In this document: positions 291-47,382 of the stretch, piece by piece
How the letters are laid out: each line of letters starts with the position of its first letter
Numbering within the stretch: position 1 is the first letter of the stretch
NCBI GenBank assembly: GCA_002269645.1
Contig: NIVC01001416.1
Coordinates: forward strand, 62,001-126,000
Direction of reading: 5' to 3'
Source: Macrostomum lignano
Lineage: Eukaryota
Length of the DNA: 64,000 bases
The notes under the pieces: model-generated
Told to the model about the DNA's origin: nothing
The model's database searches: none
The model's input: the letters and a program-made list of their open reading frames with translations, nothing else
Made by a program: the position numbers and the translations under genes

Positions 291-295
<5 letters not shown>

Positions 296-23023: not shown

Positions 23024-23159
23024 TTAAGCACCATCCTTTGTGCCGACAACTTCTACATATTCTGAGCTTGTGGGAACAGCTGGTGTCACCACAATGGCAT
23101 ATTCATGGACACTGGCTCTCGCTGAGCTGCTGCTGGTGTCACCTGATGACTGCTGAGAC
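23024..23159 (-). CDS. FN3 receptor gene A, exon 7 (cytoplasmic tail and stop)
   Basis: ACTGCAG| acceptor, phase 2. Encodes SQQSSGD...HEYAIV...SEYVEVVGTKDGA*. Confidence 0.75.
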
Positions 23160-27870: not shown

Positions 27871-27896
27871 CAACAAAGACTCTGAGCTGAACTCAC

Positions 27897-28229
27897 GCAT
27901 CTGCAGCTGCTCAGCGATGACGATCTCCGAGCCCTCCTGCCTCAGCCCGGATTTGTTGGCCACGGCAGCCACCGCCACCGTCAGCTTCAGCGAGAGCAGC
28001 TCCGCCTCCGCCAGGCTCAGCAGCAGCCTCATCGAGTTGAACGCAGCCTCCCTCAGCAAGTCGGGCTTCGAGGCGCTGCTCACGCGGAACTGCAGCAGGT
28101 CGGCACCCTTGGCAGCGCTGGACGTCCAGTTGAGCAGCAGCACCGCCTCGGCGGGCTGCGACTCGCTCGGCTGCGACTCCGCGGCAGCGGCTGAGGGTCG
28201 GCTGGCGGGGTCCGCGATGAGCAACGGCC
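27897..28229 (-). CDS. FN3 receptor gene A, exon 3 (divergent FN3-like)
   Basis: CTCCCCAG| acceptor and C|GTGAGT donor; 333 bp, phase 1-1. Confidence 0.78.
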
Positions 28230-28267
28230 CTGGGGAGGGCGGGGAGATGGGAATTGAGATTGAGCGG

Positions 28268-28600: not shown

Positions 28601-28689
28601 GCATGGGCTGCAGAGCTAGGAGGCAAGCAAAGAGGTGAAAGTATTTTTTAATGTATTACTAATACGTATTAAATATTGTTGAAGCTCAC

Positions 28690-28911
28690 TGGTCAAAGCT
28701 GTACCATATATGTAAGCCCCGCTTGGAAACCCAGTCTTGACAGGTTTCACTGTGACAGTGACAGAGGCTCCGGATGGCTGGCCTGTGCACACAGCGGTTG
28801 TGTCTGGCACTCTGCCAGCGCAGCTCACTTCATACTCGACTCCGACATCGGGAGAGACCGCCCACCGGGCTCTGAAGCTCGTTTCCGTCACATCCGAGAT
28901 GTGCACTGGTC
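28690..28911 (-). CDS. FN3 receptor gene A, exon 2 (short FN3 module)
   Basis: 222 bp, phase 1-1. ISDVTETSFRARW...VEYEVSC. Donor A|GTGAGC. Confidence 0.85.
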
Positions 28912-29456
28912 CTGAGATATTGATGAGTGCTGAAATTGTGTTGGGACTTGCTCAACAGATGTTGTGAAGTTTCGCGAGCTGGTTTTGTATTTAAAAATCA
29001 TAAAAATAGTAATGAAGTCCATGAGATTTGCCCTCAGACGAAGTACATGACGAGTTTCGCCCGCAATGCTTTGCTTGCAAAGACTTGCTAAGCCTAAAAT
29101 ACTTGCTAAGCATTGGGGGGCAATGCAGACAAAATCTGCCGCGTGTCTAAATGCACTGCAGGAAAAAAGCATTGGGGGTAAACCTCGGCGGGAACAAACA
29201 AGGCGGAAAACTCGCTCGTGGGCAAATGCTTTTCGGGAAAATCTCGGCGGGCAGTTCTTCTGCGTGCTTAATCATTGCTGGTAATAAAATGTGTAATACA
29301 AACAGAACTCATCGAATAATCAAATTCAGTTCAGTTAGAGAGTGAGAAATGCTATGAATTCATTTAGAAATCCCAGTAGCCAGGTGTGGCAGCCGACGGC
29401 GCACCTGAGGCTGCGTGCATTCTGCACTGAATGACCCGCACAGTTTTCATTCTCAC

Positions 29457-29862
29457 CTGTCCTTCCAGAAAGATGGAATGCAGGGCTGAGTCTGCAATTC
29501 CGAAGTCCAGCCTGAATGGAGACGTTGTACTCAGTAGCTCCATTGAGTCCTCGAAATGTGTACGTCTCATCTGTAGTGTTGTGTTGCTGAGTGGGACAGC
29601 TGGGGCAGTTTACTATGTAAAAGTACCCTGTGATGCCACGGTCTGGTGACTGCCAATCAACTGTTGTTGATGAAATTGTAGTAGAGCGAACAGCAGCCAC
29701 TGTCACAGGATCCACCTGACCCGGCACCAGTTTTCCACACGACGTGCCTTGAGCAGCCGCCTCATCGCACAGCAGCAGAGCAGCTGCAGCAGCAACCAGA
29801 AGCAGCCAATAGAAGCAACTGCAGCGGAAGAGACGTCGGGCTCCAGCAGACACGCAGTGCAT
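29457..29862 (-). CDS. FN3 receptor gene A, exon 1 (signal peptide plus FN3); 917 aa in total
   Basis: Hydrophobic LLLVAAAAALLL signal, FN3 signature RGLNGATEYNVSI, donor G|GTGAGA. Seven exons sum to 2754 nt with no internal stop. Start ATG is inferred. Confidence 0.82.
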
Positions 29863-30588
29863 TTGGCGAGTTTGTGCCAATCTGATTTTATCCAGTCAAA
29901 ATTAACGCGGACTTTCGCTTTTGAGAATAAGTAAAACTCTCGCACGCTGAGCCGACCACAGGGCTTAAAGTAAGAAAGCAATTTTTTTCTCGAAAAGTCG
30001 CTATCGCGTGTTTTGCGTCTGCCATGATAAGTAGAGCTTGTGCGCACCTGCTCTTATCTGCCGCAAAGCAGAGCTACCTGGAAAGCCGCTATGAAGTCAT
30101 GGATTTGGAGCTAGCTGCTGTGCTTTTGACAAAGTGCAAAGTGCTGGTCAAGTAGCAATTTAAAACACAAGGAGCCTCTACTCAGTAAACCTAATAGTCT
30201 GACTCTTCTCTTTGCTGGCTTTTTTTTCAATCGTGAGGGAATTTCAAAAGGCTTTTTTAGGGTTTTTATGCATTTTTTCTGAATCTTGATCAATATTTAA
30301 TAAAAAGGAACAGAACTGAGGTAGAATTCTGAGATCACTGCATAAGTTTGAATCACAAGTTACCTAAAAAAATTAAGCCCAGTATCAATAATTATTATAT
30401 TTTTTGACAGCGCCTTACAGTGACCCTGCCGAACGAAGACGGATTCTCTCAGTGCGAGGACTTCAGGTAGCTCGACTTCCATGGTGCTGAGTCTTGACTC
30501 CATTGTCTCCGACAGGAGGTCCCGGACCTGGCGAGCAGCGCACCAGCTCAGCATCATCTTCAAGTCCGTCGCGAGGGGTGACCTGACC

Positions 30589-30965
30589 CAGAAGCGTCAC
30601 CATGGATTTTATGGTGGGGCGTAGCCAAGAATTTTACACGTACATGTACACGACTTAATTCTCACATGTAAATTATTTTCAGAATCAGTGTTGTCAGCAC
30701 GCATTTTAGCGCCGCAGGCACTCATTTTAGCGCCACAGGCACTTATTTTAGCGCCACAGGCACTCATTTTAGCGCTACAGGCACTCATTTTAGCGCTACA
30801 GGCACTCATTTTAGCGCTACAGGCACTCATTTTAGCGCTACAGGCACTCATTTTAGCGCCACAGGCACTCATTTTAGCGCCACAGGCACTCATTTTAGCG
30901 CCACAGGCACTTATTTTAGCGCCGCAGGCACTCATTTTAGCGCTACAGGCACTCATTTTAGAGCC
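30589..30965 (+). mobile_element. Truncated MITE (same family as 49859-51748) with internal 21-bp repeat
   Basis: Left end cagaagcgtcaccatggattttatg...tagccaagaattttaca matches 49859 onward. Repeat unit gcactcattttagcgc(c/t)acag, ~12 copies. Confidence 0.8.
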
Positions 30966-31589
30966 CCGCCTGAATTGGTTACCAGGGGATTTAGGCTAAC
31001 AGGGGAGACGCATTCAGCCGAGTACAGGGACTCTGCTTGGGGCATGATCGGGAACTCTGGGCTCAATCTGGAGGATTTCTCAGCAGGGGATCCTTTGTGG
31101 CTGTGAGCGAGGCTGACTTGCGGCTTTAATTACTAAGAGTAGAGTGAGATGAACATGTACTGTCTATAGTTTAGATTGCTCAGAGCGAAGGGACGCGTCA
31201 GCATGGGGTTGCAACCTTCCTACTGCCATTCTGTGCCAAGACTCGCTAATCCCCTCTACTGCACGCATACTCGGCCCGCAGCACGCGCACACAGCCGTTA
31301 GCTTACCCAAACTTCCTTATGCTTTGCCACCCAGGGAGAAAGGCTTCAGCAAGCCATGAGTGAAATGATGGTGAAAGAGTGAATAATGATGAGGTTAGTT
31401 AATAGTTAATAATTAGGCCCTTAGGCAAATAATTAGGCAATTACGCGGCTTCACTATTGAATAAAGTACAGCAAAAGATACGGTATCACAATCGGCTCAG
31501 CTCTCTAATCAAGCAATGGAAAATAGGCAAACCCCGGATAAGCAAAGGCAATTAGAGCACAAATTAGTAACAGGAACTTACCGGCAGCT

Positions 31590-31593
<4 letters not shown>

Positions 31594-31624
<31 letters not shown>

Positions 31625-31981
31625 CGGAGTGACCGTGGGCGGCTGTTGGCTGTAGACAGGCAGGCTGTAAAGTGGCGATGCGCTAAAGCGACGAGGCGCT
31701 GATGTAGTTTAGGCGATGCTGAAGATGCTTGGCGGTAACAGACCGCGGGCCGGCAGGGGTTCGTCCTATAGACGAATGGGTCAGATCGGTGTCTGACAGC
31801 GAGTCCACAGTAGGACGAGAAGGGACGCGTAGTAACGCTTCTGAGGATTCTCATTGCCGAAAACCGATTCCTTAAATAGCCTTCCCAGCCGCCGCTCCAA
31901 GGTCGTTTCCATGACTCTCTCTCTCTCTCTCTCTCCGCAGGCGATGGCGCCATCGGCAGGAAGCTCTTGCTGAATACGCCT

Positions 31982-32036
<55 letters not shown>
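31594..32036. repeat. Cluster of (AG)n, (CT)n and (TG)n microsatellites
   Basis: Approximately 31594-31622, 31912-31934 and 31983-32036. Confidence 0.92.
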
Positions 32037-32040
<4 letters not shown>

Positions 32041-32448
32041 TTTGTTTGTGTACATTGTGTACATTTGCGTACATGTGGTCCTATATACCGGAAATTGCGT
32101 ACATTTATGCGTACAATTATGTCTATGCGCTACATTGTGTGTAGTTCGTTGCCCTGCGTTTGTAAATACAGTTTAGTCCGTGCACTGCATTGATGCCTAC
32201 TTTTGTGTTAGGTACCTGCTTTTTATTAAATACACTGCACCAAAAGCAACTTTAATCGGTACATACTGTGTTTTTGTAGAGGTGCCGGTATGCTTTTTAA
32301 TACATATGTCTTTAGTGTAATTTGGTGTGCTTCAACTTGGCTCGCGAATCTTGCACTATAGCTCTCTAGTGGAAAGTACTCTTACTTGTGCTGGCTGCGG
32401 GTGATAGTAAGGCTTTCTGCTTGACTTCTTTAGTTTACTTGATGGTTA

Positions 32449-32750
32449 AATGAGGAGTGGGAGCTGACGCGCCTACCTCAGGGGAGGAATGCAGCCCCAC
32501 GGTCTGGTGCAGTGCAGCGCTTTCTGTTATCCCTCTCCGTCCGCACTGTACTTGGTCTCCGCTAGGATCACCCCTTGGGGTTAAGAGTGGGCGGGTCCTT
32601 TGTACTCGACCCTGGGTTAAAAACTCGCATTTGGAGGCTCTGGGGAGAGTTGCAGTGGAGTTCAACAAATTTCTGATAAGATCTCTTGCGGGGGCATGAC
32701 ACTCGTCTCGAAATAATAAAAACCTGAACAAGTGCTGGATGCCCTTACTA
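32449..32750 (+). mobile_element. Possible highly decayed reverse transcriptase fragment
   Basis: EEWELTRLPQGRNAAP resembles RT motif B. The downstream YxDD position is disrupted. Confidence 0.33.
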
Positions 32751-33344
32751 GTTGGCGGGTTGTTACCTCTACAATTGTGTACTATTTCTGTCAATATTTT
32801 CCCCTGCATTATGTCAATATGTGCTACAGCGTGTCATAATATGATACTTTACGCACTAATATGTATCATAATTTTCCTGCATTATGCCTGCTTCTGTCTC
32901 TACGATGTGTGTATTTTAGCCTATGCATCTACATAATTCGAATCTACAGTGTGTGCATATGCACCTGCATTATACTTGTATCTACTGTGCGTATGTGTAT
33001 TTCAACCTATGTTTTACAATATACTAGCATCTACAAGCGCCTACTACACTAATGAGTAGGTTCTGTGTATTATACCTACTATTTTGTCTATTTCACCTAC
33101 TTTTCTGCCAAAATATCGATAAAATGCACCTACATTGTGTGTTTTTTGCTGCCCATATGCTTAATTCTATATGTCCGTACGCCTATATGTTTCGTAATAT
33201 GTATTATGCCCTGATATTTACACCTACTGATGTGATTAATATGTGTTTTGCTTACTTTTTACGTAAATATACGCAATTTCACCTACTATAAGTAGTTTTC
33301 ACTAGCCTAATTTTGTGTTAATAGGTATTGTTGACTACAAATCG

Positions 33345-33720
33345 ATGTACACTCATATCGGGAGAGTGTACACTCATATTGGGAGAGTGTACACTCATAT
33401 TGGGAGAGTGTACACTTGTATTGGGAGAGTGTACACTCATATTGGAAGAGTGTACCTTCGGCTCGGGAGGGGGGCGCCCGCGGCGTACATTTCGGGGGGC
33501 CGCTTGGCACCTGTGGCTCGAGTGCCATAAGGTAGGGTGTACATGTCGGGGTACATGTCGGTGGGGTCGCCTGCGACATACATGTTGGGTACATGTCGGG
33601 AGGGTCGCCTGCGGCATACATGTCGGGAGGGTTGCCTGCGTCATACATATCGGGGCGCATGGACAGGTCTCGAGTGGTGTACTCTTTGTGTGAATGCATT
33701 CTTGGTGTGTAACTCTTGAC
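33345..33720. repeat. Composite repeat block (gggagagtgtacactcatat; gggtcgcctgcg)
   Basis: Read directly; related to 35960-36290. Confidence 0.85.
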
Positions 33721-35652
33721 CATCCCTTCCCTCCAGGAGCACTGCAAGTAGACTAGTATGGCTTGGTATTCGGAGTTGGCGTGTGTACACAATATACTCT
33801 TTGTAATATTTACCTGACCTGGGTTTGTAAGGTCTAATAACATATAAATGACTACTGTTGACCCGTTGACGCATCTGGATGGTGTGATAAAAACTAATAA
33901 CGTACCGCGATTTCGAGAGAAATCCTAGCACAATACTGTTCTGTCTGGCATGTGGAAAAGTATTTACCCCGCCTTCGCTTACTCATACTGCCTACCGACA
34001 AAGCTTATCTCTATTAGCAATCTGTTCGTGGTGGTTTAGAAGGATACTGTCTTCCTGTATATAGCTCTCTATCCCTTCATCACTCGTAATAACTTCATAA
34101 ATGCTCGCTTGACCAATGGCTGGTGCTGAACTAATAATTCATACGATACATATTGGCTAATACTTTCTAACTCCGTACAGCTCACAAGTTTCTACTCTCT
34201 ACCTTATCAGTAACATTAAAATGAAAAAGGTAAAATTTGCTGGTTTTGTGCTTTGTTTGCTTACTTTTCTATTAAAATACTGGCGGTTTATAATTGAAAA
34301 TGTCTGCTTTTTATTCAATTTTATGTGGTTTGAAGGTTTATTTTTGCTAAAATGCATGGTTTCTTATAAAAATTTCTACTCTCGACAATGATTGTGTCTG
34401 CAGCTATTTCATTAAAATAACCTACTTTTGAATAAAACGTTGTATTTAAGCCCCTAGTTTTTTTTCAAAACATAATGGAAACCCTCACAACGCCCTTGGA
34501 ACCTCCTCAAGCAGCTTACATAGAGCATGCAGACCCCGAAACCCCCTCTAGTGTGCCCTGATTTCAGCGGTCTGACGGTTAAGATCTGTATTTTTACACT
34601 ATATTTTCCTTCATACAGCAATACAGGAGGGTTTGGAAGAGTGAGTCTGGCAGGAGAGGGGGCTTGTGGGGTGATGAGGATGCGTACACACAGTTTAGCC
34701 TGTTTTAGCCTACCTTTTGGGCTAATATACTTACTATTATTACTACTATTATACCTACTATGTACATACTATTATACTAACCACTATTAAATATGCTGCA
34801 CTAAAACCAACTTTTGATAATACATAGCGTGTTTTGGTCGATTCTCCCTCACGTCTCTGCCCCTACACATGTGCTCTGCTCGCTTTGTTCTCTGTTTGTG
34901 TACCTCTCTGTAACGTCTCTGTACGCTCAGACTGGTTTCTCCGTCCCCACACGCCATCTACTATTGTTTGCTGTTACCTACCCCTACACACTGCTCTCTG
35001 TCTCCCTCCGCGCACACATCTCTGGCCTTGCATGCAACTCCCCTGTCCTGCCCTCGCGTGGGTCCTTGTCTATACATAGCTACCGGACCCTACCTCTCTG
35101 TGCCTTGCTCGGAACTCTGTCCCAGGCCCCCCTTCACGCTTCTCTGTCCCGGGCTGCAACTGGCTGACACGCGCCTCTCTGTTCCCCTGCCTGCGTGGCT
35201 GCCTACCCCTGCACACTGCTCTCTGTCCCCTCCTCTCCGCGCCTCTCTATCATCCTATTCCTGCAGCTGACCATGCCGTTCAGCTCTGTCCACGCACGGC
35301 TCCACCCCTGCCCGTGTCTCACTGTACCGCCCTGTGTGGCTCCCTTACCCAGCGCGTTTGCTCCCTATCTCCCTCCTGCTCCATATGTTTCTGTTCCCTC
35401 ACACTACGCACCAGTGGCCAGCTCTCTGTCCATACACATCTCTGCTCCTCCACTCTATCCTCGCGTGGTCCTTGACTGTTCGCGTGCCCCTGCATACCCT
35501 GCCTGCCTCTCTGTCCCCTGCAACTGGGGAGGGAGCTCTCTATCCTCTGTACGGCTCTCTCTGTGGGGTGTGTGTGACTCACACTGTCTCTCTGTCCTAG
35601 CATGCGCCTCTCTATCCGGCTCCTGCAGCAGGCTGTGTTATTCACATCTCTT

Positions 35653-35851
35653 TCCGCCCCACCCCTCTCTGCCCGTACACGCTCACTGTACAGGGCTGCG
35701 TCAGCATCGGGGTTAAAACTTCTCGCTCCCTATGCTTCAACAGTATAACAACCTAGTGGCTGGTTCTCTGTCCGCCCCACCCCTCTCTGCCCGTACACGC
35801 TCACTGTACAGGGCTGCGTCAACATCAGGGTTAAAACTTCTCGCTCCCTAT
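35653..35851. repeat. 81-bp direct duplication (35653-35733 and 35771-35851)
   Basis: Near-identical copies, read directly. Confidence 0.9.
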
Positions 35852-35959
35852 ACCCCCAAACCGTGTAGTGGCCTAGTATGGGCGCGACCTGGGTTCGATT
35901 TCGCTAGTTGAGATGTGGGTGAGAGAGGGGAAGAGGCTAGGTGGGGCAGGGCGTGAGGT

Positions 35960-36290
35960 ATAGGGTGCCTGCGGGGTACGTATCGTTGACTACATATCGG
36001 TGTACACACATATCGGGAGAGTGTACTAGGGAGAGTGTACTGGGGAGAGTGTACTTGGGAGAGTGTACTGAGGAGAGTGTACACTCGGGGTGCCTGCGGC
36101 ATGGAAGAGTGTACACCCGGGTGCCTGCGGCTTGGGAGAGTGTACACTCGGGGTGCCTGCGGTTTGGGCGCCTGCTGCATACATATCGGGGTACATATCG
36201 GGAGGGTGTACATGTCGGTAGGGTGAGCATACATATCGGTACATGCCGGTAGGGTCGCCTGCGGCTGGGGAGGGTCGCCTGCGGCTGGAT
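35960..36290. repeat. Composite repeat block (gggagagtgtac; gggtgcctgcgg; acatatcgg)
   Basis: Same motifs and orientation as 33345-33720. Confidence 0.85.
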
Positions 36291-38099
36291 GGCGCTTGGC
36301 GCCACGCGCCTGCGGCGCGCGCGCGCCGAGCGCCGATATCGATACGCGTATCGATCACCTCGGGGCGCCAGCCAATGAGAGGCGAGGAGGGTTGACACCC
36401 ACCCCACCTCCAAAACGCCCGGATCTGCCGGCCCTTAGTAGTGGGGATAATTGGCACAGCGGGAGGTCGAGAAAGTGTTGCGCAAGCAAAATTGAGAACA
36501 ATAGGGCTGGGATCGGGAACAAAGGAAATGGAAATCGGGTGAAGAGTTGATTCGGGAGGTGATCAGTCACCCGAAAACTCCCACTTCCAGACCCTAAGCC
36601 TGGGAACAAAATCAGTGATCACTTACTGTTGCGGGCTCCTCTTCTTTGTCGTGCGCGTCTGTAGAACTCGTCTCCGTAGAGCGGTTCCTCCCGGGGTGGT
36701 CTTCTTGAAGTCTAGAGTCGGCCGAAGGTGAGAGCGTAACAATTAAATCGACGTCGCAGTATTTCTCGAACGCAAATCAATATAGGCCTTAAACTCAGTA
36801 ATGAATATCAACGATGCGCCCTTATAACAAAATCAACTTTCTGTAATAACAACGAGGTCCTCCAAGAAGGGCGTCTTCTTCTAGATCTAACGGAATCGGA
36901 GTCGTGTGCTCCTATCGGTTAATCTAGGATAACCAAAATCAATCAATCGATAATCCTCTAAGGGTATCGGAATCGGTCCGCAGATCCTATCCAATCCCTT
37001 AGGAAAATAGGAGGCCTCAAATTCAATGAACTCAGTCAAATCGACTGGACAGTAGCGGCCGGCAATAAATCGCTCTCAAAATCAATAACAAAGGCTCGAG
37101 CAACGGCTCACCAATTGGTTTATCTCTCTCTCAGAGATATAGCCTCGCTTAGCTGTTCCAGCAAGCTCCAAGACCTTTAGAGGCTGCTCCGAGTCTGAGA
37201 TTTTTAGCTCGGATTTTAGCTTGTATTTATAGTAAAATTTTGGGGTAAACAGGTTATTTTGGGAAGGTGACTCATTTGCTTTTTGGAATTTTGACCTCTC
37301 GATAATTGAATAGAATACAACAGGTTTGCGCATCAATACCATATTTAGAATTCTATTTTTAGATGTTACATAAGATGATTACTCGTTGTTTTCGTGGTCT
37401 TCTAAAATAGTGTATGACAACTCGGAATTTTTAGATTCGCATTTTCGCATTTTTACGTTACTACTTATAGTAGTTTACTCTGTATCTTATTTGGAGATCT
37501 GTACACTGGGATAATTTGGGAAAATCGAGAACAATCGAAAAGTAAACATTGGAGAAAAGGTGCCAATTGGGTGCGAAAACGAGAACAAAAGCGAGAGAAA
37601 ATCCGGGAAATGTGATAATTGGGTGCGAAAAGGAGAACAAAAGAACCAAAAACGAGAACAATAGAAGCGGAGGTGGGGTTGGTGTCGCATGAGAAATTTG
37701 GGGAGGAGAACAATAGCATAAGAAAGGTTGCGCAAGAGGGGTGGTGAGTCATCGATGAGTCATCGAGGGGAAAGAGAGGTCACAAGGCTTGCGTCACCGT
37801 TTGGGAGTTTACTAAGGGTTGGGAGGCGGTGAGCGCACAAAGTACTGTGAGTAGGCACGGGAAGAAGGGGGGACAGCGCAGGAAAAACAGTCCAAAAGGA
37901 AAGAAAAAGAGGGATTTGGGGGAAAAGTACATAATAGATAGGCTAGAGCGCATAGGAAATAGAGTAGCGGGTGAGGGAGCAGAGGGGGATAGGGGCTCCG
38001 GAAAGGCTCGTGTGGTGGGGTGGGAGACGGAGCCGAGGCAGCAGGAGGCGCAGCAGAGCGGGAGTCAGCAGGCCTGGTCAAAGACCTGGCCCAGTCTCG

Positions 38100-38330
38100 A
38101 CAGCTCTGCTCAAGGGCTGCACCGAGATCGGAGGTACTTTTGAAAAATTTCCCCTGCCATATCCCGCGACCAGAGCGTGGTTACATCATTATTTCCATAG
38201 CGGGTCTCAGGGTGTGGTGGTAGACTGTAGGGACAAAGCATTGGCATGTCCCCATATCTTTTACTGGGAAGACAGGTTCCCCTTGACCTAACCGAAGGCG
38301 CGCCTTTTCCGCCTTCGAGCATCGTGTACG
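38100..38330 (+). mobile_element. Possible decayed Gypsy-type integrase C-terminal fragment
   Basis: SIGMSPYLLLGRQVPLDL at 38237-38290 resembles integrase STGxSPxxLLFGRxxxLPL. Stops nearby. Confidence 0.33.
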
Positions 38331-40881
38331 GGAAGCCGTGCCCGTGACTAGCACGAGAGCAGTCGATGGACGCACTGTACAGGTCCCTGCTGCGGTACGC
38401 GGGCTCGAGTAACCGGCCCTTAGCGTCACCCTGCTCCAGAGACGCCAGATGTTGCTGGGCAGCTGCCTGAGGAGCCACGAGGGCGGTGATCAGAACCCGC
38501 TGGCGCTGACTCCCTTGCCAAGGGTGAACTTTGCTTTTGTTCAAAGCTTTTCATGCTAACCTGAAAGCTGTCAAACTTTACCCCCACAGTCCGTTGGCAC
38601 ATCTCCCTCTCGTGTGCGCTCAAGGGCCGTGTCTTCTGCGAATATCTACTATTTATTAGCCATTGTGATGGTAGTGCTAAACAGCAATACATTTGGTGCT
38701 AATGAAGTTCCGGCTTTTTATGTCCTTGAACTTGAGACCAGGTATCCATGTGAAGTTTCAGGTACCTATCGATCTCCCTCGATAACTACACACAAAGGTG
38801 ACCGCAATGCCTTGGATGCCAAGTTTCGAGTGTATTGTAAGACATAAGCACAAAATATTTGCATGAGTCCCAGATGGTCCTTGGCGATGGCGAAGCGCTA
38901 GCGGTGAGGCGTTATAAACATTATATTGCATATTCGCAGGCACACCTCAAACACACTCTCACACATCCTCATCATCTCAGGCATGTACACTGGGTTTTTT
39001 GCATTCTGAGTCCAGAATCAGGCTGCTAAATTGAAAACCAGGATGCCAGCAGGCATCAGTCGAAAAAGTTCAAAATCTAATAAAACACCAACATCTCTAC
39101 CTTACCCTTTACACTGTTGAGCCTCTCTGACCCACAGAAGCGGCAGACATCTGCCAACTCCCATGTCTACAGATTGCTCAAATTTGAAAATTGATAGACA
39201 TCTTTTGTAGCAATACTAAGAGTCCCAATTAATACAAAATTAAGGGTATTACATGTACAAAATCCTAGCATGTACTCTCCGTTGTTCAAGGACCACTAGA
39301 AGTTACCGTCACCGTACCTTCTAGTGGTCCTTGTCCGAGTCCCTTGGGATTGGCTCTCATGGGTATTACTTGCACTACAGAATCCCGGCCACATTTTGAG
39401 AACGCAAACCTGAAATGATGTGGCTTGAAGTGGTGACTGACACGAAATATATCAGACTGCCTTCCTTAAAACATTTAATGAGACATTGCCTTTCTGTTAT
39501 GACTTTGTAAATCGACTTAGCATTTTAATCAATCTTGTGAATACACCCACAAGAGGTTTGAAAAGCTTTCAGATAGCTATCAGGTAGCTTTGTAGATAAA
39601 TCTACTAAAAGAGCCTTCCAAACAAATCTACTTTTATGCAAACACAAGAAACGAAAAAAAACGCTGAAACCTTTTCATATTAGACATAATCATAATTTAA
39701 ATTGAAGATCGGTTATTAAATTTTTATTGAATAGTATAAAATTTGGAATCAATGACAAGAAGCAGTTTTAAGTCTGATTCATTTTTAAAATCAACCAACG
39801 AAGTCGAATAGACAATATTTTTGAAGTCTTGCAGTTGTGCTCCTCAACTGTCGCTCTTGCCTGTCTTCTTGCCGATGTAGCAGACGTGCAAAAACAGAAT
39901 TCTTCGATCAAATCTGAAAAGGTAAAAACGTAGGAGATTTCGAAATTTTGTTATTTACGAAATATCTCTGCATAAGGCAATTGAATAGCTTTTCATTGAC
40001 CATACTCATAAATAGTGATTATCCCATTCAAAAATAAATTCACACGGTTTTTCACTCTTGGGTTAAACTTAAGGACTACTAAAGTCCAACGGTGCAAGGG
40101 TAACTTCTCAGTGATCCTGGGTTCAAATCTCTCAAGGGTCTGTAGGGGTGATAATTACTAGCTTCTGAATGTGAGATTGAAGCGTTGAAGCGTTCTTGAA
40201 GCAGAGATTCGAACTTGGGGTAGGCAGTAACTTTAAATCAATGTGTCATGCTGTTGAAACATTCGAATAGCATTATTAGGAAGCTCTATGTATACTACTT
40301 TCTGGTTTTATCTTTAGTAGTATAAGCGACCTCCTACTGATATGATAGACGGTACATGTAAAATTATATATTATTCTTATTTCAACGACATACATTCCAA
40401 AATAATTATATTTACTGTAGGCATGATTACATTGCAAGTAGCAATTGTTACTTTGAAGAAGGGCTTTGAGCAATTCCCCAAAATCAAAGACCACAGAAGG
40501 CACGCAGTGGTTCATTATGGGTTCAGTAGTGGTTCAGAACAATCCTTCTGTGGACCACAGAAGACCACAGAAGGCACCCATTCACCTGCCCCAGTACGCA
40601 GGCATGCAATCACAGAGGGTGTAAAGAGGACTTGACTTTATCACCGTCCTAAAACTGACCTGACGATTTTCATTTAAGATTCAATTCAGACTACTGAGAA
40701 AAGTAGACAAATAAAGATTTGAGTTGTAAAATTCCTCAAAAAGCCATTAAAGAACATCCTGCGCACACTAAGCTTGGCGGGAGAGAACGGTGTGTGGCTG
40801 TGGCTGACTGACGACAGACATTTTAGCGTGTCACAGTCAAGAAGTACACAGAAACTAAGAGCATTCCTACAGCTCGCTCAC

Positions 40882-41247
40882 CGAGACAATCCGTGCAGAC
40901 TTCTGGCCGGAAGAATGTCAGCATTGGGCGCCCATCTGCGGCATTCCTCTCGAGCTTGAGGAAAACTTCCTGGATAGATTTTCGTGTAGCACATCTGTAG
41001 GCTGGCACCGGGACCTCTGGAAATCGGCGACCAGGCGGCTGATGGACATCTGGTCCTGACGGTTTTCTCTTGAGCAGCATCAGCTGCATCATTCTTAGCT
41101 GTCTCCGGCTGCTGGACTCGCACTGGCGCCTTGCAAAAGTGAAAATGGCGCGCCTCAGGCTGGTAGGTGCGCCACAGCAGACGGGTCTCGGCGTCGACCA
41201 GCAAGCCGAAGTTCATGGGCGGGCGGCTGGGACCGACAAGCCAGCTT
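40882..41247 (-). CDS. Gene B exon 6 (end of CTLD-1, linker, start of CTLD-2)
   Basis: ACTGCAG| acceptor, phase 2. SWLVGPS...LLW...FHFCKAP, then CPSAAW...CY...SFPQAREEC. Donor CG|GTGAGC. Later exons unresolved. Confidence 0.7.
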
Positions 41248-41430
41248 CTGCAGTGCCGGCAGGAATGGAAATCACGCTTTAGTCAATCGTGAAGCATTCA
41301 CATGTAAGGCGTATGACCCAACTATGACAGAAGAGAGTGTTTGAATTCATGTCACACGGATTTGGGTTTCGGCCGGAAGGGATGGGGCTGCCTCACAATC
41401 CCACTTCAGGGAAATGGGGCCTATGGTTCT

Positions 41431-42840
41431 GGCGCCCCTGGTGCTAAAGCCCCTGGTGCTAAAGCCCCTGGTGCTAAAGCCCCTGGTGCTAAAGCCCCTG
41501 GTGCTAAAGCCCCTGGTGCTAAAGCCCCTGGTGCTAAAGCCCCTGGTGCTAAAGCCCCTGGTGCTAAAGCCCCTGGTGCTAAAGCCCCTGGTGCTAAAGC
41601 CCCTGGTGCTAAAGCCCCTGGTGCTAAAGCCCCTGGTGCTAAAGCCCCTGGTGCTAAAGCCCCTGGTGCTAAAGCCCCTGGTGCTAAAGCCCCTGGTGCT
41701 AAAGCCCCTGGTGCTAAAGCCCCTGGTGCTAAAGCCCCTGGTGCTAAAGCCCCTGGTGCTAAAGCCCCTGGTGCTAAAGCCCCTGGTGCTAAAGCCCCTG
41801 GTGCTAAAGCCCCTGGTGCTAAAGCCCCTGGTGCTAAAGCCCCTGGTGCTAAAGCCCCTGGTGCTAAAGCCCCTGGTGCTAAAGCCCCTGGTGCTAAAGC
41901 CCCTGGTGCTAAAGCCCCTGGTGCTAAAGCCCCTGGTGCTAAAGCCCCTGGTGCTAAAGCCCCTGGTGCTAAAGCCCCTGGTGCTAAAGCCCCTGGTGCT
42001 AAAGCCCCTGGTGCTAAAGCCCCTGGTGCTAAAGCCCCTGGTGCTAAAGCCCCTGGTGCTAAAGCCCCTGGTGCTAAAGCCCCTGGTGCTAAAGCCCCTG
42101 GTGCTAAAGCCCCTGGTGCTAAAGCCCCTGGTGCTAAAGCCCCTGGTGCTAAAGCCCCTGGTGCTAAAGCCCCTGGTGCTAAAGCCCCTGGTGCTAAAGC
42201 CCCTGGTGCTAAAGCCCCTGGTGCTAAAGCCCCTGGTGCTAAAGCCCCTGGTGCTAAAGCCCCTGGTGCTAAAGCCCCTGGTGCTAAAGCCCCTGGTGCT
42301 AAAGCCCCTGGTGCTAAAGCCCCTGGTGCTGAAGCCCCTGTTGCTAAAGCCCCTGTTGCTAAAGCCCCTGGTGCTAAAGCCCCTGGTGCTAAAGCCCCTG
42401 GTGCTAAAGCCCCTGGTGCTAAAGCCCCTGGTGCTAAAGCCCCTGGTGCTAAAGCCCCTGGTGCTAAAGCCCCTGGTGCTAAAGCCCCTGGTGCTAAAGC
42501 CCCTGGTGCTAAAGCCCCTGGTGCTAAAGCCCCTGGTGCTAAAGCCCCTGGTGCTAAAGCCCCTGGTGCTAAAGCCCCTGGTGCTAAAGCCCCTGGTGCT
42601 AAAGCCCCTGGTGCTAAAGCCCCTGGTGCTAAAGCCCCTGGTGCTAAAGCCCCTGGTGCTAAAGCCCCTGGTGCTAAAGCCCCTGGTGCTAAAGCCCCTG
42701 GTGCTAAAGCCCCTGGTGCTAAAGCCCCTGGTGCTAAAGCCCCTGGTGCTAAAGCCCCTGGTGCTAAAGCCCCTGGTGCTGAAGCCCCTGTTGCTAAAGC
42801 CCCTGTTGCTAAAGCCCCTGGTGCTAAAGCCCCTGGTGCT
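41431..42840. repeat. Near-perfect 15-bp minisatellite (aaagcccctggtgct), 93 units plus one variant, gene B intron 5
   Basis: Read directly. Confidence 0.98.
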
Positions 42841-43076
42841 GGCGCTCCTTAGATGAGGAAGGCAACTTTTGAAGGCAACGAATACCTGACTTCCCAAACC
42901 TATCCATGCCTTGATGAATAAAGTTCAGCTTTCGTAGCTTTCAAAAACGCGAAACAAATCAAATGTCTCAACTGCAGCTACTCGTAGGGAATAACTGAAT
43001 AGTCGCTAACTGAATAGGACTGGTATGTCCCAGTAGCTTCCCAGAGTGTCCCAGGCCACCTGCAACCAGAGCTCAC

Positions 43077-43434
43077 ACGCTGACGTTGATGCCGGAGTTG
43101 TCTCTGAGCCACTTGAACTTCCCTCCGTCTGCCTCGTCTCTGTACAGTCCGGTCCACGCCGCGTCTCCTTGAAACCTGCAGTCTCTGCACTGAGCTCTGT
43201 AGTCTTCTCTGAGTCTCCAGTTCCTTGCTGAGTAGTCCATCACCCAGTTCATCTCCGACTGAGATGTGATCCACAGCAGGTGAGCAGACGGGTCTCGTCT
43301 CTGACAGTCAGAAACTGCCGCTGTGAGGTTTCGTCCGTTGGATCCCTTGACCAGGAGGTAGCAGAAGCCATTGAATTGCAGCCAGTCTGCTGTCGCACAT
43401 GAACCTCTGTTTCCATCTGTGGGTAGGGCAGCCC
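43077..43434 (-). CDS. Gene B exon 5 (C-type lectin-like domain, N-terminal part)
   Basis: CATADWLQFNGFCYLL...AVSDCQ...AHLLWITSQSEMNWV...AWTGL...FKW; phase 1-2. Confidence 0.85.
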
Positions 43435-43790
43435 CTGACTTATAGTCCCAAATTTTTGCCAAAATTATCATCCGATACAGAGACCTCCTACTGCCTGATA
43501 AATTTATAATGACTGCAAATATCAGTCGCTTTTAAGAAGGCCTGCAATCAATTTACTGAGTCAGAAGTAAGAAGAAGAGTAAGAAGTCAAGGAAACTCAG
43601 TCAGTCAGTCACTGATATGTGATATAATTCCGACAAGTTAAAAATTTCGACATTGTGGAAGTCAAAAACGTTTGCCACAACTGCTCTGCCCTTCGAGTAT
43701 TTATCTGCATCAATGATTATGCTCAGGTAAATATTGTTTAATAAGATGCATGCAGGAAAACCGGTGGCACCGCAGCAGCCGAGCACTCAC

Positions 43791-44060
43791 TGGTCAGCTG
43801 ATTTGATAAAGCCGTGATGACGTCATCAAAGCCGCCTGCCTTCTTCACAGCCACCCGCAGCTCATATTCCTGTCCAGACTGCAGGGAGCCGCAGGTGGCA
43901 GACGGAGTGGGTGAAGACGCGGTCGAGACTTCACCTGAGCCGACTCGCTTGCAGGTGAGCTGGTACGAGACGCCAGAAGTGCTGGATGGCTGCCAAGTCA
44001 CGGAGATGGCGGTCTCATTGGAGCTGTACTGAGCTGAGCTGGGGTCAATGCCGAACAGCT
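43791..44060 (-). CDS. Gene B exon 4 (FN3 module)
   Basis: TTGCAG| acceptor and A|GTGAGT donor; 270 bp, phase 1-1. SVTW...YQLTC...LQSGQEYELRV. Confidence 0.85.
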
Positions 44061-44140
44061 CTGCAATGAAACGGACCCAATAGAAGCGAGCTGTGCCTCA
44101 TATGAGAGAAGCTGCAATGATTTACTGAGCTCCAACTCAC

Positions 44141-44413
44141 TGGTCAGCTGGATTGGCAGCCAGGTGACAACTTCATGGAAGCCGCCCTTCTTAGTGACAG
44201 CCACACTCAGGTTATAGGCCTCTCCTGACTGCACATTGCTGAAGGTGGCACTCAGATACTTTGATGGAGGCAGAGATGTTGAATTCTCTGTGCTGACTCG
44301 CCTGCAGGTCACCCGGTACAGAACTCCTTCAGTGATGGACGCCGCCCAAGTCAGGTGGATGGAAGTCTCCCTGACGCTTAAACTCACTAAGCTGGCGTCA
44401 ATCGGGAAGAGCT
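44141..44413 (-). CDS. Gene B exon 3 (FN3 module)
   Basis: CCGCAG| acceptor and A|GTGAGT donor; 273 bp, phase 1-1. HLTW...YRVTC...VQSGEAYNLSV. Confidence 0.85.
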
Positions 44414-45999: not shown

Positions 46000-46175
46000 A
46001 GTCACTGTTTCGAGGAAGCATAGTCGAAGGAATCGCAATGGATAAAAGCAGCGTGCAGGCTGACGGCATCTCATTTTGTAAGGCATGCGTGGAAGGCAAA
46101 ATGCACAAAAAACCATTTGGGAAAGGTGAGAGTTCAATGTGCAACGAATTGGTGTCTCTGATTCACAGCGGTGCA
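46000..46175 (+). mobile_element. Ty1/Copia fragment (GAG-pre-integrase region and integrase start)
   Basis: CKACVEGKMHKKPF...LVSLIHS matches the Copia CxxCxxGKxxRxPF...LxLIHSD pattern. Confidence 0.75.
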
Positions 46176-46194
46176 AATAAAGGAAACCACATCG

Positions 46195-46330
46195 ATTGGA
46201 GCTGGCGTCGATGCCAACAGCTCTGCAATGAAACGGACCCAATAGACCACATCAAAGCAACCTCATGAGAGCAGCTGCAATCATTTAATGAGCTCTATAT
46301 CACTCGTCAGATGGATTGGCTGAGTGACAC
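46195..46330 (-). pseudogene. Relic FN3 exon-intron-exon junction inside gene B intron 2
   Basis: Similar to 44045-44170 (cagctctgcaatgaaacggacccaataga...cactcgtcagatggattggc); frameshifted LF-GIDAS start. Confidence 0.7.
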
Positions 46331-46491
46331 TGGACTGAGTGCACTTACGATTTATTTTCAAAAGGCTGATAAACTCCTCTAGTGATTTAATATCAACCAA
46401 AGAAGCCTAGAGGTCACACATGGATGACTGAGTGTTGTAAATACTTTATAAAACATATCATTAAAAGGTAATTAATATTTTTGGAGCTCAC

Positions 46492-46713
46492 TGGTCAAAG
46501 CTGTGCCATGAATGAAAGGTGCAGGCGGGAACCCAGTCTTGACGGGTCTCACTGTGACAGTGACAGAGGCTCCGGATGGCTGGCCTGTGCACACAGCGGT
46601 TGTGTCTGGCACTCTGCCAGCGCAGCTGACTTCATACTCGACTCCGACATCGGGAGAGGCCGCCCACCGGGCTCTGAAGCTCGTCTCCGTCACATCCGAG
46701 ATGTGCACTCGTC
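46492..46713 (-). CDS. Gene B exon 2 (short FN3 module, paralog of gene A exon 2)
   Basis: 222 bp, phase 1-1, near-identical to 28690-28911. Confidence 0.75.
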
Positions 46714-46985
46714 CTGGGACTTTGTTGAGATCTGCAATTGTGTTGGGACTTGCTAAACTGATGTTTTAAAGTTTCGCGAGGTTTGGTACTTAAGCAGTAT
46801 TAAATTAGCAACAATTTTTATTTTTAATAGTAACTGAATCATCTAATAATCAAATTAAGATTAGTTAGAGTCAAAATTCAAAATGAATTTATTCAGAAAT
46901 CCAGGTGGCCAGGTGTGGCAGCCAATGGCGCACCCGAGGCTGCGTGCATTTTGCACTGAATGACCCGCACAGTTTTCATTCTCAC

Positions 46986-47382
46986 ATGTAATTCCAGAAA
47001 GATGGAATGCAGGGCTGAGTCTGCAGTTCCGAAGTCCAGCCTGAATGGAAAAGCTGTACTCAGTAGCTCCGTTGAGATCTCGAAATGTGAATGTCTCATC
47101 TGTAGTGTTGTGCTGCTGAGTGGGACAGCTGGGGCAGCTCAGTGTGTAAAAGTACCCTGTGATGCCACGGTCTGGTGGCAGCCAATCAACTGTTATTGAT
47201 GAATTTGTGGCAGAGCGAACAGCAGCCACTGTCACAGGATCCACCTGACCCGGCAACAGTTTTCCACACGACGTGCCTTGAGCAGCCGCCTCATCGCACA
47301 GCAGTAGAGCAGCTGCAGCAGCAACCAGAAGCAGCCTGTAGAAGCAGAAGAGAGACCGACCTCTGTCTGCTTGAGAACTCAT
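46986..47382 (-). CDS. Gene B exon 1 (signal peptide plus FN3); junction to exon 2 creates TGA, so possibly truncated or a pseudogene
   Basis: ATG at 47382; paralog of gene A exon 1; donor T|GTGAGA. Confidence 0.7.

What the first reader, a model, noticed from the sequence alone, without database searches (positions are those of the whole stretch)
28640..47382. Two tandem surface-protein genes share one N-terminal cassette but have unrelated bodies: candidate modular FN3/lectin recognition family
28640-29830 and 46440-47350 are close paralogs (signal h-region, FN3 exon, intron ends, 222-bp FN3 exon; roughly 85-90% identity by eye). The first ~12-15 codons and everything after exon 2 differ: A continues with FN3 domains, TM and Tyr tail; B with FN3 x2 and C-type lectin domains. 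Phase-1 exon boundaries make the modules interchangeable. Inference: a mix-and-match receptor family, possibly immune or adhesive, diversifying by exon shuffling or gene conversion.
Basis: partly seen in the sequence, partly recalled or inferred. Interest (0 to 1): 0.72.

Follow-up and report, generated by a model that had tools for sequence, protein, structure and literature searches.

The report
Flatworm FN3 surface-protein gene cluster
Two neighbouring genes of the flatworm Macrostomum lignano really do share a 90%-identical start, but they belong to a larger tandem family of fibronectin-type surface proteins that gains and loses exon modules by unequal recombination, which is an ordinary way for such families to evolve.

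Summary
Window 28668-28978 and 29294-29817 match 46471-46780 and 46825-47346 at about 90% identity. The match covers a signal peptide plus FN3 exon, an intron and a 240-bp FN3 exon.

The window is Macrostomum lignano contig NIVC01001416.1:62001-126000, and both genes lie on the minus strand.
- Gene B (47382-39844) is the annotated 651-aa protein PAA68155.1. It has the head, two FN3 domains and a divergent C-type-lectin-like domain, with no membrane anchor.
- Gene A (29862-23024) is unannotated. It is an intact six-exon, 883-aa reading frame with the head, an FN3-rich body, one transmembrane helix and a two-tyrosine tail.

The bodies are only partly "unrelated". Full-length paralogues PAA68156.1 (about 19 kb away) and PAA75074.1 carry the head, B-type FN3 exons and the A-type body in one protein.

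At least nine head copies lie on three homeologous contigs, with at least five downstream architectures joined at phase-1 exon borders. Gene A has the 5' flank of one paralogue type and the 3' flank of another, so it looks like an unequal-crossover product.

The verdict is a lineage-specific tandem multigene family. The modular reading is supported on an evolutionary timescale, and the immune or adhesive function is untested.

The parts
46986..47382 (-). Gene B exon 1 (397 nt). Start codon, signal peptide (MSSQADRGRSLFCFYRLLLVAAAAALLLC) and the first FN3 domain. Ends in phase 1 with donor GTGAGA.
   Evidence: Splicing the seven B exons reproduces PAA68155.1 (P0013) exactly. Pfam fn3 hit.
46492..46731 (-). 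Gene B exon 2 (240 nt, phase 1-1). Second FN3 of the shared head.
44141..44413 (-). Gene B exon 3 (273 nt, phase 1-1). FN3 of the 'Fc' type, also present in PAA68156.1 and PAA75074.1.
   Evidence: Pfam fn3 E 7e-6.
43791..44060 (-). Gene B exon 4 (270 nt, phase 1-1). FN3 of the 'Fd' type, 93% identical to the equivalent exon of PAA68156.1.
   Evidence: Pfam fn3 E 8e-8.
43077..43416 (-). Gene B exon 5 (340 nt, phase 1 to 2). N-terminal two thirds of a divergent C-type-lectin-like domain.
40882..41247 (-). Gene B exon 6 (366 nt). C-terminal third of the lectin-like domain (...WRTYQPEARHFHFCK), a linker, and the start of a second, truncated lectin-like domain.
39844..39913 (-). Gene B exon 7 (70 nt). 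Last 22 codons and the stop. No transmembrane segment anywhere in B.
41434..42840 (.). 15-bp minisatellite (about 94 copies, 99% alike) inside the B intron that splits the lectin-like domain. The aligned array spans are shorter in the homeologous contigs.
29457..29862 (-). Gene A exon 1 (406 nt). Start codon, signal peptide (MHCVSAGARRLFRCSCFYW...) and the first FN3. Ends in phase 1.
   Evidence: The leader is identical in type to PAA75074.1. Pfam fn3.
28979..29293 (.). Insert of about 315 bp in A intron 1, absent from the six other head copies examined.
28690..28929 (-). Gene A exon 2 (240 nt, phase 1-1). Second FN3 of the shared head.
27897..28229 (-). Gene A exon 3 ('A3', 333 nt, phase 1-1). 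96.7% identical to the same exon of PAA68156.1. Flanked on both sides by 17-bp minisatellites (28261-28600 and 27306-27882).
26155..27278 (-). Gene A exon 4 ('A4', 1124 nt, phase 1 to 0). FN3-type repeats. dN/dS 0.18-0.21 against paralogues.
24224..24636 (-). Gene A exon 5 ('A5', 413 nt). Membrane-proximal domain and the transmembrane helix (residues about 802-834).
23024..23159 (-). Gene A exon 6 (predicted). Cytoplasmic tail RSQQSS...HEYAIVV...SSEYVEVVGTKDGA and the stop.
   Evidence: Canonical AG acceptor and frame. Motif resemblance to the PAA75074.1 tail. No transcript evidence.
29863..30200 (-). Gene A 5' flank. Homeologous to the 5' flank of PAA75074.1 (93%) and of the gene downstream of the B homeologue on the third contig.
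31927..37607 (.). 5.7-kb stretch of the B-A intergenic region. Present here and in contig NIVC01000551.1, missing from NIVC01000905.1.

Best explanation
A and B are two members of a Macrostomum-specific, tandemly arrayed family of secreted and membrane FN3-repeat proteins. The family has one basic layout: a signal peptide and two FN3 domains (the 'head'), a variable run of one-exon FN3 modules, then an FN3-rich body, a transmembrane helix and a short tyrosine-bearing tail.

The head is shared because all members descend from one gene by tandem duplication. The parts after it differ because phase-1 one-domain exons, many of them directly flanked by minisatellites, are lost, duplicated or swapped by unequal recombination between neighbouring copies.

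Gene A is a short membrane form in which the head joins directly to the body. Its 5' flank comes from a 'long-type' paralogue and its 3' flank from a 'short-type' paralogue. It is therefore most likely the product of an unequal crossover inside the head cassette that deleted what lay between.

Gene B keeps the head and two FN3 modules but ends in a divergent, probably non-sugar-binding, C-type-lectin-like domain and has no anchor, so it is predicted to be secreted.

Shown: the sequence relationships, the gene models, the domain folds, the family size and architectures, and the flank switch. Inferred: the crossover itself, the use of the A exon 2 to exon 3 splice, secretion and membrane topology, and any function. 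I regard cell-surface recognition or adhesion with tyrosine-based signalling or sorting as the most likely function, and it is untested.
For: Origin of the window:
- All protein relatives are from M. lignano.
- Window 56312-64000 is 100% identical to NIVC01001416.1:118312-126000.
- B maps to contig 109382-101844.

Gene models:
- B is seven GT-AG exons that give PAA68155.1 exactly.
- A is six GT-AG exons, 883 aa, with no stop or frameshift.

Full-length paralogues unite both 'bodies':
- PAA68156.1 (1310 aa) reads head, Fa, Fb, Fc, Fd, Fe, A3, A4, A5. PAA75074.1 (940 aa) reads head, Fa, Fb, Fc, Fd, half of A4, A5, tail.
- The PAA68156.1 gene starts about 19 kb from B on the opposite strand of the same contig.

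Nine heads on three contigs:
- This contig has A, B and PAA68156.1.
- NIVC01000905.1 has the B homeologue, PAA75074.1, G3 and G4.
- NIVC01000551.1 has the B homeologue and the next gene.
- Further, unsampled copies are implied by UniRef fragments that match no sampled locus exactly.

Signature of descent:
- Head exons are 89-95% identical all-against-all, and intron 1 is 72-85%.
- A quartet test gives 40 sites for positional orthology and 4 for an A=B grouping.

Recombinant A:
- At sites that distinguish PAA75074.1 from G4, A matches the former 45:3 upstream, the latter 22:3 downstream of exon 2, and about 50:50 inside the head.
- A's 90-bp exon 2 to minisatellite intron matches G4.
- The B-to-A interval is collinear with two other contigs up to A exon 1.

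Selection:
- A4 dN/dS is 0.18-0.21.
- The three B homeologues are all 651 aa, with overall dN/dS 0.43-0.60.

Domains:
- FN3 by Pfam and by PDB sequence search, with LAR/PTPRF at 3.6e-9.
- The lectin-like fold has an AlphaFold pLDDT of 89.6, and the 50 best Foldseek matches listed are all C-type lectin domains. HMMER links it to canonical CTLD proteins.

Topology:
- A has a signal-like segment and one transmembrane segment. B has only the signal-like segment.
Against: - No transcript or protein in the searchable data joins A exon 2 to A exon 3.
- A is absent from the GenBank gene table that lists B.
- The structurally similar copy G3 on the homeologous contig is frameshifted, so A might be silent.
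- The flank switch in A is also what a mis-join inside the 1.2-kb head would produce. 36% of the scaffolds, by assembly length, are reported chimeric between subgenomes (PMC10733133).
- The third contig ends in exon 1 of the gene downstream of B, so the ancestral arrangement (deletion here versus duplication there) is not fixed.
- Head dS (0.07-0.19) is lower than intron divergence, and head dN/dS is high (0.34-0.96). Simple descent without some gene conversion or selection does not fully explain this.
Confidence: 0.78

Rival explanations
1. One reading: a mobile head cassette was shuffled onto two otherwise unrelated genes, one FN3/TM gene and one FN3/lectin gene.
For: B's lectin-like end does belong to another lineage. 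CTLD-repeat membrane proteins such as PAA84928.1 have no head. A distant paralogue, A0A1I8JDX3, shares B's architecture with its CTLD 75-87% identical but its head only 44-54%. That pattern fits a recent module transfer. Borders are phase 1.
Against: B's exons 3-4 and A's exons 3-5 occur together, in that order, behind the same head in PAA68156.1 and PAA75074.1. Most of both bodies is therefore family property, not unrelated. The homology includes intron 1 in all copies, which points to gene duplication and not to insertion of an exon cassette.
Confidence: 0.2
2. Assembly artefact: gene A is a chimeric join, inside the repeated head, between a long-type gene and a short-type gene of the same or another subgenome.
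For: The flank switch happens exactly across the head. Mlig_3_7 contains many subgenome-chimeric scaffolds (PMC10733133). A is not annotated.
Against: A's head is 6-10% different from every other sampled head and carries a private insert of about 315 bp, so it is not a copy of either putative parent in the sample. The assembly is long-read based and the head is only about 1.2 kb. The short architecture (head to A3) exists independently in G3 and, from its exon-2-downstream intron, probably in G4.
Confidence: 0.07
3. One transcription unit with alternative 5' cassettes. B's exons 1-4 and A's exons 1-2 would be alternative variable starts, each with its own promoter, spliced to shared constant exons A3-A5. 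This is the layout of clustered protocadherins and UGT1A.
For: B exon 4 ends and A3 begins in phase 1, and both splices would give the same Arg codon (A|GG). The UniRef fragment A0A1I8FJF4 joins an Fd-type FN3 directly to A3 through Arg (...SNQLT-R-PLLIADPAS).
Against: B has its own downstream coding exons and stop, in a transcript-based model conserved at 651 aa in three homeologues. The Fd end of A0A1I8FJF4 matches no sampled locus above 92%, so it comes from another gene. The required intron would be 15.5 kb, against a reported mean of 1.1-1.4 kb.
Confidence: 0.06
4. Gene A is a silent relic. The head duplicate plus body is an unexpressed by-product of recombination on its way to decay, and only B (and PAA68156.1) are working genes here.
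For: A is not in the GenBank annotation. The homeologous short copy G3 is frameshifted. A intron 1 carries a private insertion.
Against: A keeps an uninterrupted 883-codon frame over six exons with all-canonical splice sites. A4 dN/dS is 0.18-0.21. The annotation pipeline discarded transcripts overlapping repeats and collapsed near-identical copies (PMC5730564), so absence from it is weak evidence.
Confidence: 0.2

Closest known systems
Tandem immune-receptor clusters shaped by unequal crossing-over (primate KIR/LILR, rodent Ly49). This comparison is from general knowledge, not tested here.
   Same: Same-orientation tandem paralogues share a highly similar leader and first-domain region including introns. 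They differ in the number of one-exon extracellular domains and in tail type. Recombinant genes have the flanks of two different neighbours. Copy content differs between haplotypes or homeologues, and pseudogenes are interspersed.
   Different: The domains are FN3, not Ig. The animal is a flatworm with no known counterpart of these systems. No ligand, expression pattern or signalling partner is known. The tail motifs (YAIV, SEYVEV) only resemble ITIM/YxxPhi consensus.
FN3-array ectodomains of receptor-type tyrosine phosphatases (LAR/PTPRF, PTP-delta, DEP-1/CD148) and of DCC and IGF1R
   Same: These are the best sequence matches in the PDB for A's body (PTPRF 3.6e-9). There are weak Pfam Fn3_Dep-1 hits. 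UniProt auto-names some family members 'Protein-tyrosine-phosphatase'.
   Different: No phosphatase or kinase domain is present. The cytoplasmic tail is about 50 residues.
C-type lectin-like domains without the sugar site (NK-receptor CTLDs, CD302 and similar)
   Same: The predicted fold of B residues about 397-547 matches DCIR, dectin-2, MCL, DC-SIGNR, mincle and NKR-P1B, with TM scores up to 0.84 normalised by target length. HMMER reaches canonical CTLD proteins.
   Different: It is below Pfam Lectin_C detection. It has no EPN/QPD or WND motif and carries an extra CxxC-containing insert (alignment A1). It belongs to a Macrostomum-specific subfamily that also forms 6-10-repeat membrane proteins.
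Clustered protocadherin / UGT1A variable-constant loci
   Same: Repeated promoter-bearing 5' cassettes lie upstream of exons that they could all splice to in frame.
   Different: No transcript evidence exists. B terminates in its own exons, and other family members are complete stand-alone genes.

Membership tests
Fibronectin type III domain proteins (Pfam PF00041) | Sequence match above the Pfam gathering score | tested here: met
   Against a cut-off of 25 bits: head of A 35.2, head of B 44.3, B exon 3 26.6, B exon 4 32.8, A exon 4 29.4, whole B 84.
C-type lectin-like domain (CTLD) superfamily | CTLD fold (two helices, two sheets, long loop region, conserved Cys/Trp core) | tested here: met
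   AlphaFold model from a 9-sequence alignment has pLDDT 89.6 and pTM 0.85. Foldseek against the PDB gives 447 matches at E<=0.001, and the 50 best listed are all CTLDs with probability 1.00.
C-type lectin-like domain (CTLD) superfamily | Pfam Lectin_C (PF00059) match | tested here: not met
   No hit even at E<=10 for the exon, the whole domain, whole B or the 6-repeat relative PAA84928.1. phmmer does reach canonical CTLDs: DEC-205 4.5e-7 and CLEC4D 0.006 in the PDB, and mannose-receptor-like proteins around 1e-5 to 1e-6 in the 1.8-billion-protein library.
Ca2+-dependent carbohydrate-binding C-type lectins | EPN or QPD tripeptide plus the WND motif that ligate Ca2+ and sugar | tested here: not met
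   Neither EPN, QPD nor WND occurs anywhere in B's domain or its eight aligned relatives. The C-terminal part of B's domain reads ...GPSRPP... and ...HFHFCK (alignment A1). The domain should therefore be called lectin-like, not a lectin.
Receptor-type protein tyrosine phosphatases (name given by UniProt to some members) | Cytoplasmic PTP catalytic domain | tested here: not met
   No phosphatase family in Pfam scans of B or of A's body and tail. A's tail is about 50 residues.
Type I single-pass membrane receptor (gene A) | N-terminal signal peptide, one transmembrane helix, short cytoplasmic tail | tested here: met
   Kyte-Doolittle scan gives hydrophobic segments at 11-38 and 802-834, plus one borderline 19-residue window (284-302, score 1.63 against a threshold of 1.6). 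This is by hydropathy only, with no dedicated predictor, and the tail exon is predicted only.
ITIM/ITSM-type inhibitory receptors | [S/I/V/L]xYxx[I/V/L] motif in the tail that recruits SH2 phosphatases | tested here: inconclusive
   One consensus match (SEYVEV) plus YAIV in A's predicted tail. PAA75074.1 has YATV and YVEI, and PAA68156.1's annotated tail has none. Phosphorylation and recruitment are not testable here.
Tandem multigene family evolving by unequal crossing-over | Several same-orientation neighbours sharing homology that includes introns | tested here: met
   B and A here; four heads in 29 kb of NIVC01000905.1; two in NIVC01000551.1. Intron 1 is alignable in all seven compared copies.
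Tandem multigene family evolving by unequal crossing-over | Recombinant member whose two flanks belong to different paralogues, and gene-content differences between homologous chromosomes | tested here: met
   A matches PAA75074.1-type markers 45:3 upstream and G4-type markers 22:3 downstream. The homeologous contig has the PAA75074.1 body and G3, then G4, where this contig has only A. A mis-assembly could mimic this.
Variable/constant alternative-first-exon loci (protocadherin-like) | Transcripts from each variable cassette spliced to the same constant exons | not testable with these tools
   No RNA reads are available. Only phase compatibility could be shown.

The most novel reading that the evidence does not exclude
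The cluster could be a flatworm self/non-self or partner-recognition repertoire.
- The membrane-distal two-FN3 head would be the ligand-binding part. It is kept diverse by ectopic gene conversion and selection. Head dN/dS is 0.34-0.96 against 0.2 for the membrane-proximal body. Exons 1 and 3 of B are 7-10% diverged between homeologues whose flanking introns are 97% identical.
- Minisatellites abutting phase-1 exons would act as recombination hot spots that reshuffle modules.
- The same head would be displayed both on tyrosine-motif membrane receptors (A type) and on a secreted lectin-like form (B type), giving paired receptor and soluble versions.
Probability: 0.1. Interest if true: 0.65.

Novelty: new member of a known kind. 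Interest (0 to 1): 0.33.

Why it matters
For M. lignano, a transgenic regeneration and stem-cell model, this work does four things:
- It documents an unannotated but intact receptor-like gene.
- It corrects the picture of three "hypothetical proteins" into one family with defined modules.
- It gives a concrete example of how the three subgenomes differ in gene content through recombination between tandem copies.
- It flags a Macrostomum-specific branch of C-type-lectin-like domains that standard Pfam annotation misses.

In general terms it is a textbook case of domain-exon modularity, not a new principle. It would become more interesting only if expression or binding data tied the variable head to recognition.

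Tried and rejected
- **Pfam Lectin_C.** Scans of the B lectin-like exon, of 3-frame translations of 39700-43600 and of whole proteins found no Lectin_C. The domain was only established by PDB phmmer, the exhaustive HMMER search and structure prediction.
- **Word-indexed protein search with the lectin-like exon.** It found nothing, although the exact protein is in the collection. That was a miss of the index or clustering, not true absence.
- **Head search.** It returned only one fragment because the long family members are hidden in clusters whose representatives lack the head. They were recovered through the listing of cluster members.
- **The look-up of encoding contigs.** It had no record for the UniRef-only fragments P0001 and P0003.
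- **My first guess for the acceptor of B exon 5** (tcag|GG) was wrong. The annotated protein shows cacag|AT, 18 nt downstream.
- **One 24-kb gene with an internal head duplicate.** This early idea was dropped once B's own terminal exons and its 651-aa homeologues were found.
- **Recent gene conversion between A and B.** The quartet test gave only three adjacent supporting sites against 40 for orthology, so I treat it as a hint only.
- **Pinning the crossover point inside A's head.** This failed because markers are mixed about 50:50 through exon 1, intron 1 and exon 2.
- **Literature search for the four locus tags.** It found no paper.

Full report
**Where the window comes from.** The sequence is eukaryotic, rich in minisatellites, and its genes of interest lie on the minus strand. 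Every protein relative found is from the free-living flatworm Macrostomum lignano. Window 56312-64000 is 100% identical to the first 7689 bases of a locus fetched from GenBank assembly GCA_002269645.1 (Mlig_3_7), contig NIVC01001416.1:118312-147196. Gene B maps to contig positions 109382-101844. The window is therefore NIVC01001416.1:62001-126000, with window coordinate + 62000 = contig coordinate.

**The observation.** Self-blastn gives 28668-28978 vs 46471-46780 (89.7%, 312 nt) and 29294-29817 vs 46825-47346 (90.1%, 526 nt). In a multiple alignment the A/B identities by part are:
- first ~20 codons: 66%, with a 9-nt indel
- rest of exon 1: 92.6%
- intron 1: 79%, plus an insert of about 315 bp private to A
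- exon 2 (240 bp, not 222): 90.0%

Similarity ends about 30 nt after the exon-2 donor. Both heads contain FN3 by Pfam.

**Gene models.** B has seven exons, all GT-AG: 47382-46986, 46731-46492, 44413-44141, 44060-43791, 43416-43077, 41247-40882 and 39913-39844. Their translation equals GenBank PAA68155.1 (BOX15_Mlig022912g1, 651 aa) residue for residue. According to PMC5730564, that annotation was built from genome-guided transcript assemblies and then filtered. B is therefore a transcript-supported model.

A has six exons, all GT-AG: 29862-29457, 28929-28690, 28229-27897, 27278-26155, 24636-24224 and 23159-23024. They give an open 883-codon frame. Exons 3-5 are confirmed by alignment to database proteins. 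The exon 2 to exon 3 junction and the tail exon are predictions. A is not in the gene table returned for the region that lists B. Exon 1 of both genes ends in phase 1. Exon 2, B exons 3-4 and A exon 3 are all phase 1-1.

**What the proteins are.** A has an N-terminal hydrophobic signal-like segment, the two-FN3 head and a 620-residue body. The best PDB sequence matches for that body are the FN3 arrays of LAR/PTPRF (3.6e-9), IGF1R, PTP-delta and DCC. A also has one transmembrane segment (about 802-834) and a tail of about 50 residues with YAIV and SEYVEV.

B has the head, two further FN3 domains and then a 150-residue domain split over exons 5 and 6 by an intron that holds a 15-bp minisatellite of about 94 copies. 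Pfam does not recognise this domain. Other evidence does identify it:
- phmmer links it to DEC-205 and CLEC4D.
- An exhaustive HMMER search links it to canonical mannose-receptor-like CTLD proteins.
- An AlphaFold model from nine family sequences is confident (pLDDT 89.6).
- The 50 best Foldseek matches listed are all C-type lectin domains (DCIR, dectin-2, MCL, DC-SIGNR, mincle).

The Ca2+/sugar motifs (EPN/QPD, WND) are absent. It is therefore a lectin-like domain, and not demonstrably a lectin. B then starts a second such domain, breaks off after about 55 residues and ends without a transmembrane segment. B is thus predicted to be secreted.

**The bodies are not unrelated.** Looking inside the database clusters gave two long GenBank proteins.
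- PAA68156.1 (1310 aa, N-terminally partial) reads head, four FN3 exons of the B exon-3/4 types, one more FN3, A3, A4, A5 with the transmembrane helix, and a tail.
- PAA75074.1 (940 aa, complete, starting MHCVSAGARRLFRCSC like gene A) reads head, four such FN3 exons, the second half of A4, a different A5/TM type and a tail with YATV and YVEI.

Exon mapping shows that B's FN3 exons and A's body are consecutive parts of one family layout. Only the lectin-like end of B lies outside it. That end is shared with head-less CTLD-repeat membrane proteins (PAA84928.1 and relatives). It is also shared with a distant head-FN3-CTLD paralogue, A0A1I8JDX3, whose CTLD is 75-87% identical to B's while its head is only 44-54% identical.

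**Family size and arrangement.**
- The PAA68156.1 gene begins about 19 kb from B's start, just beyond the window's right end and on the opposite strand.
- Contig NIVC01000905.1 (locus L001) is collinear with the window at 97-98.7% through B and most of the intergenic region. There the B homeologue (PAA75075.1) is followed by PAA75074.1, then a short head-A3-A4-A5 gene (G3), then a fourth head (G4).
- Contig NIVC01000551.1 (L004) is collinear with the window from 58130 to 29613. It carries the third B homeologue (PAA81093.1) followed 9.7 kb later by an MHCVS-type head.

That makes nine heads on three contigs. These contigs plausibly represent the three subgenomes described for this neopolyploid (about 2% SNP divergence, PMC10733133). 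UniRef fragments with other junctions (head to Fc, Fd to A3) match no sampled locus exactly, so more copies exist. G3 has a 17-nt duplication in the signal-peptide region that breaks the frame, so the family also contains pseudogenes.

**How the copies relate.** Head exons are 89-95% identical in all pairwise comparisons, and intron 1 is 72-85%, except between positional homeologues (97%). A and B are not each other's nearest relatives. In the quartet A, PAA75074.1, B and B homeologue, 40 informative sites support positional orthology. Only four support A=B, and three of those are adjacent in exon 1. At most this is a micro-conversion.

Selection estimates are as follows.

| Comparison | dN/dS | dS |
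|---|---|---|
| Heads, all pairs | 0.34-0.96 | 0.07-0.19 |
| A4 vs paralogues | 0.18-0.21 | 0.07-0.08 |
| B homeologues, whole CDS | 0.43-0.60 | 0.065-0.069 |
| B exon 3, window copy vs homeologues | 1.1-1.7 | 0.05-0.07 |

The head is thus the faster-evolving end of the protein. Some exons differ more between homeologues than their introns do. That is compatible with ectopic conversion or with selection, and I could not separate the two.

**Origin of gene A.** A's 5' flank and leader are homeologous to those of PAA75074.1 and of the gene after B on the third contig. A's short intron after exon 2 matches that of G4. At sites that distinguish PAA75074.1 from G4, A agrees with the former 45:3 upstream and with the latter 22:3 downstream. 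It is mixed inside the head.

The simplest reading is an unequal crossover within the head cassette between a long-type and a short-type neighbour, which deleted the intervening genes in this contig. The reciprocal event, a duplication in the other lineage, is equally allowed. The same pattern would also arise from a mis-join inside the head. I think that unlikely, because A's head is distinct from all other sampled heads and carries a private insertion. Only long reads can exclude it.

**Assessment.** The idea of a modular family is borne out at the level of evolution:
- at least five architectures
- at least six kinds of phase-1 junction
- two A5/TM types only about 50% identical behind A4 exons that are 96-97% identical
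- three tail types

The "unrelated bodies" claim, A-B gene conversion and an immune or adhesive role are not established. This is a lineage-specific tandem multigene family of FN3 surface proteins, with a secreted lectin-like variant, evolving by duplication and unequal recombination. That is a known kind of system. One of the two genes is already annotated as a hypothetical protein.

Noticed in passing
window 28261-28600, 27306-27882, 25830-26113, 23868-24198, 41434-42840: Minisatellites sit directly against exon ends. A3 is flanked on both sides by 17-bp arrays. The array downstream of A3 has a unit containing a GTGAGT donor-like motif and starts about 15 nt after the real donor. A4 and A5 are each followed by an array, and B's lectin-like domain is split by a 15-bp array. 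The arrays flanking A3 recur at the same places in the paralogues on L001 and L002.
   Followed up: partly
window 12028-14587 (+): LTR-retrotransposon pol remnants in three overlapping frames: reverse transcriptase (RVT_1), RNase H and integrase core.
   Followed up: partly
L001 20811-21260 (NIVC01000905.1): The short head-A3-A4-A5 copy G3 has a 17-nt tandem duplication inside the signal-peptide coding region, which puts the MHCVS start out of frame. It is probably a pseudogene and is not annotated.
   Followed up: yes
L002 9953 (NIVC01001416.1:128264, just beyond the window's right end): PAA68156.1 is annotated as N-terminally partial, but an in-frame upstream ATG gives MSSGMSAGIPRLFHCSCCCWLLL..., a complete signal peptide. 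The gene lies head-to-head with B about 19 kb away.
   Followed up: partly
window 31927-37607 and 30201-30323: A 5.7-kb stretch of the B-A intergenic region is present here and in NIVC01000551.1 but absent from NIVC01000905.1. A 113-bp insert just upstream of gene A is private to this contig. Its content was not analysed.
   Followed up: no
window 44141-44413 (B exon 3) and 46986-47154 (3' part of B exon 1): These exons are 7-10% diverged from the homeologous copies, although the neighbouring introns are about 97% identical. Exon 3 has dN/dS 1.1-1.7 on the window lineage, and some window-specific residues (SATFSN) occur in the Fc exon of PAA75074.1. This suggests ectopic gene conversion or positive selection.
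   Followed up: partly
window 8099-9760 (-) and 6451-7299 (-): Long open frames with no Pfam match. The first contains a 45-bp coding tandem repeat (9183-9556) giving KSDFPDPPLPAAKGG repeats. The second is glutamine-rich and may be a coiled coil, judged by eye.
   Followed up: no
window 1163-1564 (+): An open frame matching Pfam DUF4517 (E 3e-21), probably an exon of an unrelated conserved gene.
   Followed up: no
window 59702-59867 / 60237-60402 and 60756-61037 / 61370-61646: Two pairs of inverted repeats (83-87% identical) in an AT-rich stretch, possibly terminal repeats of small transposable elements.
   Followed up: no
protein collection: Long GenBank proteins of this family are filed in 90% clusters under short fragments as representatives. 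As a result, a head query missed PAA68156.1 and PAA75074.1. The lectin-exon query also missed PAA68155.1, even though it is its cluster's representative. This is worth remembering when a search of this collection comes back nearly empty.
   Followed up: yes
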